IMG/VR virus record: IMGVR_UViG_3300009011_000001
Coordinates: 124,001-188,000 of that record
DNA length: 64,000 bases
Strand: one strand, 5' to 3'
The position numbers and the translations under genes were made by a program. Below are positions 1,509-54,627 of this stretch, one piece after another (positions within the stretch are counted from its first letter, which is position 1; the number at the start of each line of letters is the position of its first letter). The notes under the pieces were generated by a model. It was not told the DNA's origin. It searched no databases and saw nothing but the letters and a program-made list of their open reading frames with translations.

Positions 1509-1540
1509 CATACAGCCAGCCCATAGGGGCTGGCTGTATG
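1509..1540 (+). terminator. CATA...TATG-closed hairpin terminator
   Basis: CATACAGCCAGCCC-ATAG-GGGCTGGCTGTATG; arms identical to 4154-4185. Confidence 0.8.
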
Positions 1541-4153: not shown

Positions 4154-4185
4154 CATACAGCCAGCCCGCAAGGGCTGGCTGTATG
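4154..4185 (+). terminator. CATA...TATG-closed hairpin terminator
   Basis: CATACAGCCAGCCC-GCAA-GGGCTGGCTGTATG. Confidence 0.8.
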
Positions 4186-4200
4186 CTGCTTAAGTATTTT

Positions 4201-4214
4201 GAGTAATACATTAT
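4201..4214 (+). promoter_or_regulatory. putative early promoter motif
   Basis: GAGTAATACATTAT. Confidence 0.6.
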
Positions 4215-4258
4215 TCGCTTGAACGTCTCGTTCCCAACTAAACAAGGATTTGATTTAA

Positions 4259-4666
4259 ATGCGTCCACTTAAACAAGCTATCTACTCTTCCCGTACTGCA
4301 GACAAGTTCGTTATCCGTCTGCCGGATGGCATGCGTGAACGTATCGCCGAAGTTGCCCGTACCCATCACCGTAGCATGAACTCTGAAATCATCGCTCGGT
4401 TGGAACAAAGCCTTATTCAGGAGGAGAAAGAAAAGAACCCAGCAATGATCGTCGGTCCAGGCGATGATGTCCTGATGCCTGCTGTTGATGCGTGGGTCCC
4501 TGTAGCCGGCATGCTCGTCTGCGAGCGTCTGGATACGTCGAAAGTTTACGGCATTAAAGATTTCGATGTGGATAAAGATGGTAAGCTGTATGCCGTCCTC
4601 GGTTCCCTTAAAGGAGAAGAAGCCAAGATGCTGATTGGGCATCTGCAACCGTTCGTTGTAACTTAA
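4259..4666 (+). CDS. amrZ: AmrZ-like Arc/ribbon-helix-helix regulator with a non-AmrZ C-terminal domain
   Basis: First ~55 aa ([52 protein letters not shown]) are nearly identical to the Pseudomonas AmrZ/AlgZ N-terminus as I recall it. Confidence 0.9.
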
Positions 4667-4729
4667 TTTTGTAAATTGTTAGTCCCTCAGGTGATTGTAT
4701 AACAGCACAAAACCACCTGAGGTTTATCC

Positions 4730-6109: not shown

Positions 6110-6162
6110 CGAATAGGCACGGGCTTCGGCCCGTGCTTTCTGCCCTTTATAAAGGAATCTTC

Positions 6163-6408
6163 ATGGAGCAGACTAAGTTTGTCTCGCTGGTCGAATCTGC
6201 TACAAACATGTTTATCAGTTACACTACGGCGATATTGGCTCAGGTCATTATCTTCCCATTCTACGACGTTCACGTTCAGCTGCATGAGAACATGTCGATG
6301 GCTTTGATCTTCGCCATCATCGGTTTCTTCCGCAACTACGGCGTTCGTCGCCTGTTCAACGCAGCACCATGGGTTAAGTTCAAAGGGGCAAAGAATGCGC
6401 AAAATTGA
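6163..6408 (+). CDS. small membrane protein
   Basis: AAGGA RBS; two hydrophobic helices; QTK..SLVE..N...RNYGVRRLFN pattern common in phages. Confidence 0.7.
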   Translation: MEQTKFVSLVESATNMFISYTTAILAQVIIFPFYDVHVQLHENMSMALIFAIIGFFRNYGVRRLFNAAPWVKFKGAKNAQN

Positions 6409-8353
6409 TTCGCAGTACAAAGATCTGTATCGCTTCATTCTTCAGCAAGGTCTGGCCAAGGCTAGCCGCACCGATATCGGCACTACGTCGGCGCTGGGCG
6501 GCTGGATGCGTTTCGATTTGCGTGACGATATCCTCCCGATCACGTCTCTGCGTCTGGTGCGCGAAGAGAAGTTCATCGGGGAGCAACTCTGGTTCGTCTC
6601 CGGCGATCCTTCGATCAAGTTCCTGAAGGACAACAACATCAGCATCTGGGATAGCTGGTTCATCCCAGGAACTGCCGTCTACGAAGACGAACAGCAATGG
6701 CGCCCAATTGTTGATGTGTTGCGGGAAGTATTCCGTTTGAAAATGGGCACTCAAATTTCAAACGATATCGTTTGCCACAAGCTGGCTACCGATACAGGCA
6801 TCTTTGCATTCCACGATCTCTTGTTCTGCATGGGGCTGGAAGATGGAGCTGATCACGTTAATCAGATCCATACCGAAAATGAATGCAACGGCTTCTCGAA
6901 AGAACAGATCGATGCCATTCGTACTCGTGCGACGGCGCTGGGCGTTGATGTGTCCTACTTGCCGAAGAAACCAATCGGCATTATCCAGCGTATTGCGCTG
7001 GCTAACGAAATGGGTCTGGGCGAAGAACTGTTCGAGTATTGCGACGGTCCAATGCCTCGTGAAGAAAAGGACACGATGTACGCGGAAGTAAACGTACAGT
7101 TGTGTCCAGAATTCACCGGCCCGTGGGATCTGTACCAATCCGAACTCGACCACATCGCCGAGTGGCTGACTTCGAAGAACGTTCCTACCGAAGTTCCTGC
7201 GCCACTAAAACCTGTCAGCCTGCAGACTCGTCTGAACCGGATCGACAAGAGCCAGTTCGGTCAGTGGAGCGCGATCAACCAGATCGTCTTCCCGCCTGTA
7301 GAAATGACGGCTGAACCAGCTCCTGAAGTCCGCACCAAAAAAGATGTCTTCGGCGAAGACGTTGTGGTGACGGCAGCGGCTGTGGAGGAAGAACCTCAGC
7401 CGAAACACACGCAGATCGAGATCTACTTCGAAGGTCGTTTCCAGAAAGTCGACATCAGCAAAGAACAGGCTGACGACATCTGGGAAATGATGGACATCAT
7501 GAAGATCCCGGCCTACCGTCTGGTCGACGCCAACATCGGCAAGGGTGGCTACGGCCCTCAGTGGCGTAACTGGCAGGACACTCAGATCGTTGACGGTTCT
7601 GAAGTTGAGCTGTACAAGTCCAAAGGTTACGAGTATGTCACTGAAGTAGACGACCTTGACTTCGGTCATCGTTTCTACGGAAAGGTGGTCATGCACCGCG
7701 ACATCGATCAGTTGGCAAATATGATCGATCTGCTGAAGACCGATCCGGACAACCGCCGCATCATCGTGTCTGCATGGAACCCGGGTCGTACTTGGCAGGC
7801 GGCTCTGCCTCCTTGCCACCTGTACTACCAGTGCGTGACCTACGAGAAAGATCTGCGTGACTACGAGGAAGACTTCGCGAAGCGCGATCTGACCGACAAG
7901 TATCTCGTCGGCCTGACTTCGATTCACGAAGGTGGCGAGCTCGATCCGGAAGATCCTGAAATCGAGAAGAAGTTCTTCGCTGCTGCGAAAGCCTTCGCTA
8001 TCGAGAATGGCATTCCGACTCGTTGGATCAGCATGGGTGTGGTACTGCGCAGCTGGGATACTCCGGCTGGTGGTGTGTTCAACACTCCGCAATACGCGGT
8101 GCTGTTGCGCATGATTGCTCATGTAACCAACATGGATGCTCGTGAACTGTTCATCGTTGGTATCGATGCGCATATTTACGACAACCAAATGGAAGCCATC
8201 GACGAGGTCATTTATACCGACTCTCCAGATGACTGCCCGCGTCTGTTCATCAAACGCGATGTTCAATCGATCGACGACTTCAACATCAGCGACTTCGAGC
8301 TGGTTGGTTATAACCCCGTGCCTAACACGAAGGTCATGCCGATCGCTCGCTAA
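6395..8353 (+). CDS. thyA: thymidylate synthase with large insertions
   Basis: RT.IGT, E.LWF, IWDSW, YGPQWRNW, RRIIVSAWNP, LPPCH, RS.D...FN, DAHIY. Confidence 0.95.
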   Translation: MRKIDSQYKDLYRFILQQGLAKASRTDIGTTSALGGWMRFDLRDDILPITSLRLVREEKFIGEQLWFVSGDPSIKFLKDNNISIWDSWFIPGTAVYEDEQQWRPIVDVLREVFRLKMGTQISNDIVCHKLATDTGIFAFHDLLFCMGLEDGADHVNQIHTENECNGFSKEQIDAIRTRATALGVDVSYLPKKPIGIIQRIALANEMGLGEELFEYCDGPMPREEKDTMYAEVNVQLCPEFTGPWDLYQSELDHIAEWLTSKNVPTEVPAPLKPVSLQTRLNRIDKSQFGQWSAINQIVFPPVEMTAEPAPEVRTKKDVFGEDVVVTAAAVEEEPQPKHTQIEIYFEGRFQKVDISKEQADDIWEMMDIMKIPAYRLVDANIGKGGYGPQWRNWQDTQIVDGSEVELYKSKGYEYVTEVDDLDFGHRFYGKVVMHRDIDQLANMIDLLKTDPDNRRIIVSAWNPGRTWQAALPPCHLYYQCVTYEKDLRDYEEDFAKRDLTDKYLVGLTSIHEGGELDPEDPEIEKKFFAAAKAFAIENGIPTRWISMGVVLRSWDTPAGGVFNTPQYAVLLRMIAHVTNMDARELFIVGIDAHIYDNQMEAIDEVIYTDSPDDCPRLFIKRDVQSIDDFNISDFELVGYNPVPNTKVMPIAR

Positions 8354-13469: not shown

Positions 13470-13470
13470 G

Positions 13471-13504
13471 GCATAGAGGCAGGGCGTTTGCCCTGCCTCT
13501 ATGC
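13471..13504 (+). terminator. CATA...TATG-closed hairpin terminator
   Basis: GCATAGAGGCAGGGC-GTTT-GCCCTGCCTCTATGC followed by a T-rich tail. Confidence 0.85.
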
Positions 13505-13578: not shown

Positions 13579-13806
13579 ATGTCTAAATATAATTCTCTTA
13601 GAAAGAAATACGACGGTCCTAAAAACGAGGACGAGGATAACGGTAGCGCCACAGATCCGGATGATAGCTTGGAGGAAAGGGATTTCGTCAGTCTAGACAA
13701 TTACTTTCATCCCAGAGCGCAGGCAGCCGATAGAGATGCAGCCCTGATCACGCGCAGTAAACAACGGGATGCTGACGTCGTCTATACTTTTAGCAGGTTC
13801 AGATAA
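13579..13806 (+). CDS. RKK-motif small charged protein 1
   Basis: GAGGAGG RBS; MSKYNSLRKKYD...DNGS. Confidence 0.75.
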   Translation: MSKYNSLRKKYDGPKNEDEDNGSATDPDDSLEERDFVSLDNYFHPRAQAADRDAALITRSKQRDADVVYTFSRFR

Positions 13807-22688: not shown

Positions 22689-23993
22689 ATGAAAGTCACT
22701 TACCACAAAGTCGAATTCCCGATCGATCAACTTCTCGAACAAAACCTGCCCTGGTCTCGTAATTTCTACACCGATCAGAACGAACTCAAGTCCGACGTCA
22801 CCGACCTGTTCGAGTTCTTCATCAAGAACAAAGACAATCTGCCGTTCTACAACCTGACTGAGCGTGAAGGCGTCCACATCCAACAGGTGGCGAACGCGTC
22901 GTACGAAGTCATGCTGCAAGCCGTGCGGTATGCGTTCGACCACCCTGACCTGATTCGTCAGTACTTCGATTGCAAGATGCTGAACAGCCCGGCTGGCGAT
23001 GCGTTCATCGCGTACGCCAAGTGGACGCTCGGTCAGATCAACATGCGCGGTCAGTCGCTGTACTCTCGCTTCGACATGGCGTTCGATCCGGTCAGTGGTA
23101 CCGTAAAAGGTATCTACGAGCTGAATGCCGATACGCCAACCATGTTGTTCGAATCGACTACGCTGCAGGACGAGTTGGTTCGCCAGATCACGGGCGAAGA
23201 CAATCAGTTCAATAACTGGTTCGAAAACATCGCGGCCACTCTGAAAGAAACTCTGAAGGGTGTGTATAAAGGCAACAAGTTCGGCGTCGTTTTCGATAGC
23301 AACTATATCGAAGACACCACTACCTGCGAGATCATCAGCGATCTGCTGGAAGAGCCGACTGCCTGCATGATGGTCGACATCAAGCACCTGGACTACGAAG
23401 ATCTGCAACCTTCCCGTCCATGGATCGCTTACGAACACACGCTCGATGGCATGTTCATCCTGTCGCCGTGGGAAGAGATGGTCGTCAACTTCCCGAAAGC
23501 CTGGCTGCATTGGGAATCGTGGTGCAACAACGTCGTGGTTATGGAACCGGCCTGGAAATGGTTCATGTCCAACAAAGGCATTTTGGCCCTGGTCAGCGAT
23601 CTGCTTGAAAAGGGCCTCATCGGCCACGGCTTCGAAGCACCTCTGTTACCATTCCTGCACACCAGCCTCAGCCAACACCGCTTCGAAGGTCAGTTCTACG
23701 TCTCTAAGCCGAAGGTCGGCCGGATGTCGAACAACATCACGTTGTACGGCGACGATGGTTACGCGGTGGTTTCCACTGGCGGCGACTACCTCGACGAGAC
23801 CAAGGTCTTCCAGGAATACTGCCCAGCCGGTTCTCTGCGTGAAGGCACTAACTTCATCGTCAGCGTCTGGATGGAAGGTGGAAGTCCGGTCACCAAGATC
23901 GCCAAAGCGACGAACATCGCTATCCGCGAATTCGATACGCATGTGTCGAATGTGCAGAATGAGCGATTCGTTCCTCACGTCGTTGTGGAATGA
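22689..23993 (+). CDS. glutathionylspermidine synthase family (YgiC/YjfC-like ATP-grasp ligase)
   Basis: LYSRFD, YELNADTPT, PWE, MEPAWK...NKGILA, YV.KP..GR..NNI, FVPH. Confidence 0.92.
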   Translation: MKVTYHKVEFPIDQLLEQNLPWSRNFYTDQNELKSDVTDLFEFFIKNKDNLPFYNLTEREGVHIQQVANASYEVMLQAVRYAFDHPDLIRQYFDCKMLNSPAGDAFIAYAKWTLGQINMRGQSLYSRFDMAFDPVSGTVKGIYELNADTPTMLFESTTLQDELVRQITGEDNQFNNWFENIAATLKETLKGVYKGNKFGVVFDSNYIEDTTTCEIISDLLEEPTACMMVDIKHLDYEDLQPSRPWIAYEHTLDGMFILSPWEEMVVNFPKAWLHWESWCNNVVVMEPAWKWFMSNKGILALVSDLLEKGLIGHGFEAPLLPFLHTSLSQHRFEGQFYVSKPKVGRMSNNITLYGDDGYAVVSTGGDYLDETKVFQEYCPAGSLREGTNFIVSVWMEGGSPVTKIAKATNIAIREFDTHVSNVQNERFVPHVVVE

Positions 23994-54594: not shown

Positions 54595-54627
54595 CATACA
54601 GCCCGGCCGTAGTGGCCGGGCTGTATG
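54595..54627. terminator. CATA...TATG hairpin between convergent genes (probably bidirectional)
   Basis: CATACAGCCCGGCC-GTAGT-GGCCGGGCTGTATG. Confidence 0.8.

What the first reader, a model, noticed from the sequence alone, without database searches (positions are those of the whole stretch)
4259..4666. Chimeric phage AmrZ: host DNA-binding domain with a replaced C-terminus
Seen: residues 1-55 match Pseudomonas AmrZ almost residue for residue. From memory, the AIYSSRT/DGMRERI variant fits non-aeruginosa pseudomonads. The host C-terminal oligomerisation region is replaced by an unrelated ~75-aa beta-rich domain (WVPVAGMLV...IGHLQPF), under its own promoter motif. Established: AmrZ controls alginate, motility and c-di-GMP genes, and phage-borne AmrZ homologs have been reported to repress CRISPR-Cas. 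Inference: this is a recently captured regulator acting as a rewired or dominant-negative AmrZ, and it hints at the host group.
Basis: partly seen in the sequence, partly recalled or inferred. Interest (0 to 1): 0.65.

Follow-up and report, generated by a model that had tools for sequence, protein, structure and literature searches.

The report
Jumbo-phage AmrZ mimic with beta-barrel tail
A soil jumbo phage encodes a small regulator whose DNA-reading head is almost identical to the Pseudomonas master regulator AmrZ but whose tail is a phage-specific beta-barrel; this is an old, conserved phage family (including the tested PaBG homolog), not a recent theft from the host.

Summary
ORF 4259-4666 (+) encodes 135 aa. 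Residues 1-55 are 53/55 identical to AmrZ of 80 non-aeruginosa Pseudomonas species. Residues 56-135 show no similarity to the host C-terminal tetramerisation domain.

- The fusion is not recent. Over 40 metagenomic relatives, many on 250-276 kb contigs, share the architecture.
- Relatives at 64-82% identity sit in the same gene neighbourhood.
- Third codon positions of the head are only 44% identical to host amrZ, against 86% between hosts.
- Both domains are under purifying selection (dN/dS 0.05 and 0.08).
- The "DGMRERI" variant also occurs in PaBG, a P. aeruginosa phage, so it is a weak host marker.

The tail (residues 76-135) models as a five-stranded SH3/Tudor-like barrel with no Pfam or PHROG family. 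In one related phage it occurs without the head at the syntenic position.

All DNA-contact and dimer-dimer residues known from the AmrZ crystal structure are kept. The most likely function is occupation of host AmrZ operators during infection. The PaBG homolog was reported to complement a ΔamrZ mutant and to reduce CRISPR-Cas Csy levels. The role of the barrel is unknown. This is a new member of a known kind, and moderately interesting.

The parts
4154..4185 (+). Perfect 14-bp-stem hairpin with a GCAA loop, 4 nt after the stop of the upstream 335-aa ORF. It belongs to a hairpin family repeated at 8 or more intergenic places in the phage genome and is a likely terminator or RNA-processing element that insulates the gene.
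   Evidence: Logan contigs break exactly here
4205..4213 (+). AATACATTA, a copy of the recurrent upstream word ACATTA(C/T). It is a candidate phage promoter element, 46 nt before the start codon.
   Evidence: TACATTA is the most enriched 7-mer in 120 upstream gaps (22-fold); instances listed
4244..4248 (+). AAGGA Shine-Dalgarno-like site, 10 nt before the ATG
   Evidence: read from the sequence
4259..4666 (+). Whole gene, 135 codons plus stop: phage AmrZ-like regulator
4259..4423 (+). Residues 1-55: AmrZ-type N-terminal arm (1-14) plus the Arc-type ribbon-helix-helix. Base-reading residues are K16, V18 and R20. Backbone contacts are R26, S39, M40, N41 and S42. Dimer-dimer residues are H36, H37, R38 and E49.
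   Evidence: residue roles from PMC3325190, numbering shifted by -2
4424..4483 (+). Residues 56-75: variable, low-confidence acidic linker
   Evidence: pLDDT 43-58; dN/dS 0.3-0.6
4484..4663 (+). Residues 76-135: five-stranded SH3/Tudor-like small beta-barrel. It carries the family motif W79-x-P81-x-x-G84-M-L-V and ends in L-Q-P-F. It has no Pfam or PHROG family.
4685..4722 (+). Downstream hairpin (12-nt arms, 92% complementary) between this gene and tmk

Best explanation
This is the AmrZ-like regulator of a 248.6-kb soil/rhizosphere jumbo phage. It belongs to an old jumbo-phage family that includes PaBG gp184 (phrog_38161). The family is built from three parts: (i) an N-terminal arm plus ribbon-helix-helix held almost identical to Pseudomonas AmrZ, (ii) a variable linker, and (iii) a phage-specific SH3/Tudor-like beta-barrel in place of the host tetramerisation domain.

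Proposed mechanism. The head dimerises and inserts its beta-sheet (K16, V18, R20) into the GGC half-sites of host AmrZ operators. Two dimers cooperate through the conserved H36/H37/R38/E49 interface. The phage can then set the AmrZ regulon (CRISPR-Cas, flagellar/fleQ, c-di-GMP and exopolysaccharide genes) independently of the host's own control of amrZ. The barrel supplies what the host C-terminal domain supplies in vivo, either higher-order assembly or a contact with a partner.

Shown here: the architecture, conservation of all contact residues, the age of the fusion, purifying selection on both domains, and the autonomy of the barrel module. Inferred: binding to host operators, the regulon effects and the role of the barrel.
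For: Head identity and family. All residues that contact DNA or form the dimer-dimer interface in AmrZ (PMC3325190) are invariant or nearly so across 46 family members.

Long-term constraint. Within the phage family the head averages 83% pairwise identity and the barrel 34%. dN/dS is 0.05 for the head, 0.08 for the barrel and 0.3-0.6 for the linker, with dS above 1. Synonymous sites are saturated against hosts. A regulator that only served phage operators could drift together with them. Staying 53/55 identical to the host protein argues that host operators, or host AmrZ itself, are the constraint.

The gene keeps its place in relatives of 64-82% identity. The protein matches phrog_38161 over residues 9-112, and PaBG gp184 is the full-length member of that family (E 1e-75). 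The PaBG homolog reduced Csy complex levels in a csy1 reporter strain, and 5 of 6 tested mobile homologs complemented ΔamrZ (10.1101/673095). The PaBG tail models with the same five-strand topology.

Barrel fold. The barrel occurs without the head at the syntenic position in a related phage, with no head remnant. It is the only Arc-type gene in the genome.
Against: There is no experimental data for this protein. The host of this phage is not established. The AmrZ operator consensus is too degenerate (A/T-rich, GCC, A/T-rich; present in 11% of background fragments) to test for sites by sequence. Whether the PaBG tail is homologous to this barrel is weakly supported by sequence (hhalign E 0.017, probability 3%), and the PaBG model used my family alignment. 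No function can be assigned to the barrel: fold matches have Z of 7.7 or less and are generic. Regulation of the phage's own genes is not excluded and could coexist.
Confidence: 0.6

Rival explanations
1. Recent capture of a host amrZ 5' half that was fused to a phage gene, acting as a rewired or dominant-negative AmrZ.
For: The head is 53/55 identical to host AmrZ. The dimer interface of the head is the same as the host's, so mixed dimers are physically plausible.
Against: Third-position identity to 80 host genes averages 44% (maximum 53%), against 86% between hosts. pS is 0.84, which is saturated. Codon use is phage-like. The architecture is shared across clades whose barrels are 13-40% identical. 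The neighbourhood is conserved. T35 is a phage-family signature (24 of 46 members), while 79 of 80 hosts have N. A full host-type copy looks different: the unverified phage Y12 record carries a full 108-aa P. aeruginosa-type AmrZ with the host tail. The PaBG-type protein works in a strain without host AmrZ, so dominant-negative action is not required.
Confidence: 0.07
2. A regulator of the phage's own transcription programme, like Arc and Mnt of P22, whose likeness to AmrZ reflects shared ancestry rather than action on the host.
For: Arc-type RHH repressors are common phage regulators (PHROG hits). The gene has its own insulated unit with a recurrent phage upstream word. It is the only Arc-type gene in the genome.
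Against: A phage-only regulator and its operators are free to co-evolve. Here the head is frozen at 96% identity to the host protein across saturated synonymous divergence, and every AmrZ DNA-contact residue is kept. The PaBG homolog acts on host genes.
Confidence: 0.2
3. An RHH antitoxin or plasmid-partition-type (ParG-like) protein.
For: Sub-threshold FitA-like_RHH match (22.6 bits against a cut-off of 27). Two PHROG hits are labelled 'partition protein ATPase'. TacA antitoxins appear among fold matches to the head.
Against: The neighbours are tmk and an unknown 335-aa ORF, with no toxin or ParA-like gene. The head is specifically AmrZ (E 7e-25), while other RHH structures score E 0.01 or worse. 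The neighbours differ between clades.
Confidence: 0.03

Closest known systems
Pseudomonas AmrZ (alginate and motility regulator Z; PDB 3QOQ)
   Same: The N-terminal arm and Arc-type ribbon-helix-helix are 53/55 identical to non-aeruginosa AmrZ. All base-contact, backbone-contact and dimer-dimer residues are conserved.
   Different: The C-terminal tetramerisation domain (residues 67-108 of AmrZ) is absent and replaced by a linker plus a beta-barrel. The gene lies on a lytic-type jumbo phage genome rather than at the chromosomal amrZ locus next to mgtE. DNA-level divergence is saturated.
Pseudomonas phage PaBG gp184 (YP_008433620, phrog_38161), the 'amrZ_PaBG' of Borges et al.
   Same: Jumbo phage, 138 aa, AmrZ-type head, non-host tail with W-x-P-x-x-G at the same place, and the same predicted five-strand barrel. 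Our protein matches its PHROG through residue 112. It is functionally tested: it reduces Csy complex levels.
   Different: Only 56% identity over residues 9-87. The tail similarity is not significant by profile comparison. The genomic neighbourhood is different. The host is P. aeruginosa.
Pseudomonas phage Noxifer gp106 (Arc-like regulator, 146 aa)
   Same: Jumbo phage of P. fluorescens. The head is 69% identical over residues 1-64 and the tail is non-host.
   Different: The tail lacks the W-x-P motif and has a long insertion. Its link to the barrel family is weak (hhalign E 0.0018, probability 15%).
Mnt and Arc repressors of phage P22
   Same: Phage RHH regulators. Mnt also carries a separate C-terminal domain for tetramer formation (PMC3325190).
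   Different: The heads are only distantly similar (E 0.3-0.5). The Mnt tail is helical, not a barrel. They regulate the phage's own genes.
Tudor-like RNA-polymerase-interacting domains (CarD/CdnL, Mfd RID, UvrD/PcrA C-terminal domain)
   Same: Same small-barrel fold class. For the PaBG model, 7 of the top 11 structural matches are of this kind (Z 6.4-7.6).
   Different: No sequence support: Pfam PF02559 is absent in 30 family members and hhalign against 23 Mfd RIDs gives probability 0.4%. They are not among the top 50 matches for this protein's own model.

Membership tests
AmrZ orthologs (host regulator) | Arc-type ribbon-helix-helix with AmrZ base-reading residues (K18, V20, R22 in P. aeruginosa numbering) and an extended N-terminal arm | tested here: met
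   residue roles from PMC3325190
AmrZ orthologs (host regulator) | C-terminal tetramerisation domain (residues 67-108) | tested here: not met
   No alignment at E 100; alignment A1 shows an unrelated tail
AmrZ orthologs (host regulator) | Chromosomal locus in Pseudomonas (next to mgtE in the examples fetched) | tested here: not met
   The gene lies in a 248,574-bp virus record with terminal repeats; host locus shown
Mobile-element AmrZ homologs (Borges et al.) | Carried by a Pseudomonas phage or plasmid, with perfect conservation of DNA-contacting residues | tested here: inconclusive
   Phage origin and residue conservation are met. A Pseudomonas host is inferred, not shown.
Mobile-element AmrZ homologs (Borges et al.) | Complements ΔamrZ and/or represses type I-F CRISPR-Cas | not testable with these tools
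   Needs expression in Pseudomonas; shown only for other homologs
phrog_38161 / PaBG gp184-type regulators | Significant match to the family profile that extends beyond the RHH | tested here: met
   E 7.7e-26, residues 9-112 on profile positions 4-99 of 137; PaBG gp184 itself scores E 1e-75
phrog_38161 / PaBG gp184-type regulators | Homologous C-terminal barrel | tested here: inconclusive
   Shared W-x-P-x-x-G motif and the same predicted topology, but hhalign gives E 0.017 and probability 3%. The barrel alone hits no PHROG.
CarD_TRCF_RID / UvrD-type Tudor RNAP-binding domains | Sequence match to PF02559 or to an Mfd RID profile | tested here: not met
CarD_TRCF_RID / UvrD-type Tudor RNAP-binding domains | Specific structural similarity above that to other small barrels | tested here: inconclusive
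   PaBG model Z 7.0-7.6. This protein's model has a best Z of 7.7 to a human Tudor domain, with no CarD or UvrD match in the top 50.
RHH antitoxins | Adjacent toxin gene; antitoxin-family profile above the cut-off | tested here: not met
   FitA-like_RHH is below its cut-off; the neighbours are tmk and unknown ORFs

The most novel reading that the evidence does not exclude
The phage-specific tail is an RNA-polymerase-binding Tudor-like module of the kind found in CarD, Mfd and UvrD. The protein would then tether or trap host RNA polymerase at AmrZ operators, turning a mimic of a host master regulator into a phage-controlled switch of the whole AmrZ regulon. The free-standing barrel proteins in related phages would be RNA-polymerase-binding factors in their own right.
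Probability: 0.1. Interest if true: 0.7.

Novelty: new member of a known kind. Interest (0 to 1): 0.45.

Why it matters
AmrZ is a master switch of biofilm, motility, c-di-GMP and, in P. aeruginosa, CRISPR-Cas expression. This work shows that lytic-type jumbo phages of soil pseudomonads have kept a near-perfect copy of its DNA-reading head for a long evolutionary time. The head is joined to their own barrel module, and both parts are under purifying selection. That turns 'hijacked homolog' into 'long-standing molecular mimicry'. It defines an unannotated barrel domain family with fused and free forms. It also gives a clean system for asking what the AmrZ C-terminal domain does in vivo, since the phages have replaced it with something else that, in PaBG, still works.

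Tried and rejected
- Megablast of 6 kb of the window against the phage collection: no match.
- Sigma-70 promoter scan: no site in the right place, and counts at the shuffle level. An exact 9-mer search with TTGAACGT found mostly coding occurrences and no motif.
- Pfam and PHROG scans of the tail alone and of 30 family tails: nothing consistent.
- PDB sequence search with the tail profile: nothing below E 0.36.
- Exhaustive profile search of 1.84 billion representatives: the long hits (300-2400 aa) are WD40-repeat proteins that add up many weak partial matches. I reject them as false.
- Barrel homodimer by complex prediction: no verdict (score 0.01). This is evidence neither for nor against self-association.
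- hhalign of the barrel family against 23 Mfd RID domains: probability 0.4%.
- BFVD search: only generic small barrels, all with E above 0.001.
- Protein-atlas feature search: no usable hit. The structural neighbours are generic SH3-like clusters (DUF4926, YodC/DUF2158, KOW, SH3_13).
- Scan for AmrZ operators in the phage: not attempted. The published consensus is present in 11% of background fragments, so the test has no power.
- No RNA runs hold the sequence, so expression could not be checked.
- The minus-strand ORF 4238-4648 (136 aa) mirrors the gene and has no homology support. I treat it as not a gene.

Full report
**What is there**

The window is bases 124,001-188,000 of a 248,574-bp IMG/VR virus record with direct terminal repeats. 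The record is rated complete and has about 51% G+C. It has no close relative in the phage collection. Its thymidylate synthase is distantly like those of Pseudomonas, Erwinia and Salmonella jumbo phages. Close metagenomic relatives carry phiKZ-type internal head proteins next to this region.

The same DNA occurs in a rhizosphere metagenome, which may be its source. It also occurs in a soil metagenome from another study, where a contig covers 4218-4650 with one changed letter.

ORF 4259-4666 (+) encodes 135 aa. It is the only Arc-type gene in the genome.

**The head**

- Pfam Arc matches residues 11-55 (E 3e-23).
- The P. aeruginosa AmrZ crystal chain aligns to residues 1-56 (E 6.7e-25). Every other RHH structure scores E 0.01 or worse.
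- Eighty Pseudomonas species (lini, migulae, brassicacearum, fluorescens, putida, helleri and others) have AmrZ that is 53/55 identical.

Pryor et al. (PMC3325190) identified the functional residues of AmrZ. In their numbering these are K18, V20 and R22 reading GGC half-sites, R28, S41, M42, N43 and S44 on the backbone, and H38, H39, R40 and E51 between dimers. All are present here, at positions two lower. They are invariant or nearly so in 46 family members.

**The tail**

Residues 56-135 have no detectable similarity to the host C-terminal domain. AlphaFold2 with a 46-sequence family alignment gives a low-confidence linker (56-75) and a confident (pLDDT 82-86) five-stranded domain at 76-135. 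The head is poorly modelled as a monomer, which is expected for an obligate dimer.

Fold searches place the domain among SH3/Tudor/KOW-like small barrels:
- The best match has Z 7.7, rmsd 2.6 Å and 57 aligned residues, to a human Tudor domain.
- Atlas neighbours with TM 0.65-0.79 are DUF4926, YodC, KOW and SH3_13 clusters.

By the tool's own guidance this level is generic. It identifies a fold class, not a function. No Pfam, PHROG or PDB sequence family matches the tail.

**It is a family**

The word search found 13 further 135-aa proteins of 59-82% identity. It also found several more distant groups of 121-174 aa, all with full-length coverage. Many lie on contigs of 250-276 kb.

All share W-x-P-x-x-G-[MQ]-x-V at the start of the barrel and a proline near its end. 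One group adds a C-terminal helical tail.

An exhaustive profile search with the barrel alone recovered only small proteins. These were further RHH-fused members with less AmrZ-like heads, plus a few free-standing barrels of 65-103 aa. The long hits are WD40 proteins and are spurious.

One free-standing barrel (91 aa) sits in a contig collinear with that of a 174-aa fused member. It is 42% identical to that member's tail, and no remnant of a head is present. The barrel is therefore an autonomous phage module that has gained or lost the AmrZ head.

**Age of the fusion**

- Relatives of 82% and 64% identity occupy the same neighbourhood.
- Against 80 host genes the head-coding DNA is 75-81% identical. 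Third positions are 36-53% identical (mean 44%), whereas host genes are 86% identical to each other at third positions.
- Nei-Gojobori pS against a host gene is 0.84, which is saturated.
- Between phage relatives dS is above 1. dN/dS is 0.05 for the head, 0.08 for the barrel (closest pair) and 0.3-0.6 for the linker.
- Arg codons are CGT in the phage and CGC in the host.
- Position 35 is T in 24 of 46 phage proteins but N in 79 of 80 hosts.

None of this fits a recent capture. The unverified phage Y12 record shows what a full host-type copy looks like: a complete 108-aa P. aeruginosa-type AmrZ with the host tail.

**Link to tested proteins**

Borges et al. (bioRxiv 10.1101/673095) found AmrZ homologs on 14 Pseudomonas mobile elements. 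Five of the six they tested complemented ΔamrZ. The PaBG, phi3 and JBD68 homologs lowered Csy complex levels. Their text does not discuss C-termini.

PaBG gp184 (138 aa) is the core member of phrog_38161, and our protein matches that profile through residue 112. It has W-x-P-x-x-G at the equivalent place. It models with the same five-strand order at pLDDT 82-94, although that model used my family alignment. Profile comparison of the tails is not significant. I therefore treat shared tail ancestry with PaBG as likely but unproven. The Noxifer tail is more divergent still.

**How it most likely works**

The head should bind the same operators as host AmrZ. The evolutionary argument is that a regulator serving only phage operators could drift with them. 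This head has instead stayed 96% identical to the host protein across divergence that saturates synonymous sites. The host's large operator set, or host AmrZ itself, is therefore the likely constraint.

The host C-terminal domain mediates tetramer formation and is needed for function in vivo (Xu et al. 2016, as cited in PMC10146422). Truncated AmrZ still binds DNA in vitro. The phage barrel must therefore replace that role or add a different one. A homodimer prediction for the barrel gave no verdict.

For the PaBG model, many top structural matches are RNA-polymerase-binding Tudor domains of UvrD/PcrA, CarD and Mfd (Z 6.4-7.6). This does not hold for our own model, and there is no sequence support. 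I keep it only as the novel case.

**Gene setting**

- A perfect 14-bp-stem hairpin follows the upstream gene. It belongs to a conserved hairpin family found at eight or more intergenic sites, and short-read contigs break at it.
- Twenty bases further on lies AATACATTA. The word TACATTA is the most enriched 7-mer upstream of this phage's genes, and about ten copies lie 30-110 nt before start codons.
- A second hairpin separates the gene from tmk.

The gene thus looks like its own transcription unit with a phage-type upstream element. That the word is a promoter is an inference.

**Host**

The AmrZ mimicry, the Pseudomonas hosts of the nearest named phages and the soil/rhizosphere origin all point to a soil Pseudomonas. 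The 'DGMRERI' variant adds little, because PaBG, a P. aeruginosa phage, has it too.

**Verdict**

This is a new member of a known kind: the mobile-element AmrZ homologs, specifically the jumbo-phage PaBG type. Two points are new: evidence for long-term mimicry rather than recent capture, and an unannotated barrel module whose function is open.

Noticed in passing
window 1509-1540, 4154-4185, 54595-54627; variant at 13470-13503; also G000 12051, 46650, 102190, 209644: Family of conserved intergenic hairpins (CATACAGCC[AC]G[CG]CC, 4-nt loop, complementary arm, then CTGT) after gene ends. Short-read contigs of the source run break exactly at them. They are probably phage terminators or RNA-processing sites.
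   Followed up: partly
upstream of window genes starting at 13579, 27701, 39951, 41045; also G000 78913, 83931, 118222, 214454: The recurrent word ACATTA(C), usually after an A/T-rich stretch and 30-110 nt before start codons, is the most enriched 7-mer in upstream gaps (22-fold). It is a candidate phage promoter element.
   Followed up: partly
window 6395-8353 (+): The thymidylate synthase ORF is 652 aa. The Pfam domain is split into three stretches, and phage homologs cover only 53-60% of it in two pieces. This implies a large insertion; relatives are 566-664 aa.
   Followed up: no
G000:C1:69547-69954 (outside the window), locus L125: A 675-aa ORF gives a sub-threshold match to Chimallin_Phikzvirus (E 6e-4, 14 bits). 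It may be a distant phage-nucleus shell protein.
   Followed up: no
window 22689-23993 (+): Glutathionylspermidine synthase-like ORF (PF03738, E 3e-43). A similar gene lies near the AmrZ-like gene of a 264-kb relative (L011).
   Followed up: no
L123:1933-2208 compared with L011:5001-5525: A 91-aa protein consisting only of the barrel plus a helical tail occupies the syntenic position of a 174-aa RHH-fused family member in a related phage. No RHH remnant is detectable.
   Followed up: yes
L126:601-927 (Pseudomonas phage Y12, UNVERIFIED record): Carries a complete 108-aa P. aeruginosa-type AmrZ with the host C-terminal domain. This is either a true recent capture or host DNA in the record.
   Followed up: partly
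window 4238-4648 (-): A 136-aa mirror ORF lies antisense to the gene and is one residue longer than it. It has no homology support. A naive longest-ORF gene caller picks it instead of the real gene.
   Followed up: partly
window 6133-6408 (+): A DUF7220 ORF (E 3e-21) overlaps the start of the thymidylate synthase gene by 14 nt. The arrangement is conserved in relatives.
   Followed up: no
L124 (contig carrying P0155): Another free-standing barrel protein (96 aa) lies between a tubulin-like gene and a chimallin gene in a nucleus-forming-type phage contig.
   Followed up: no
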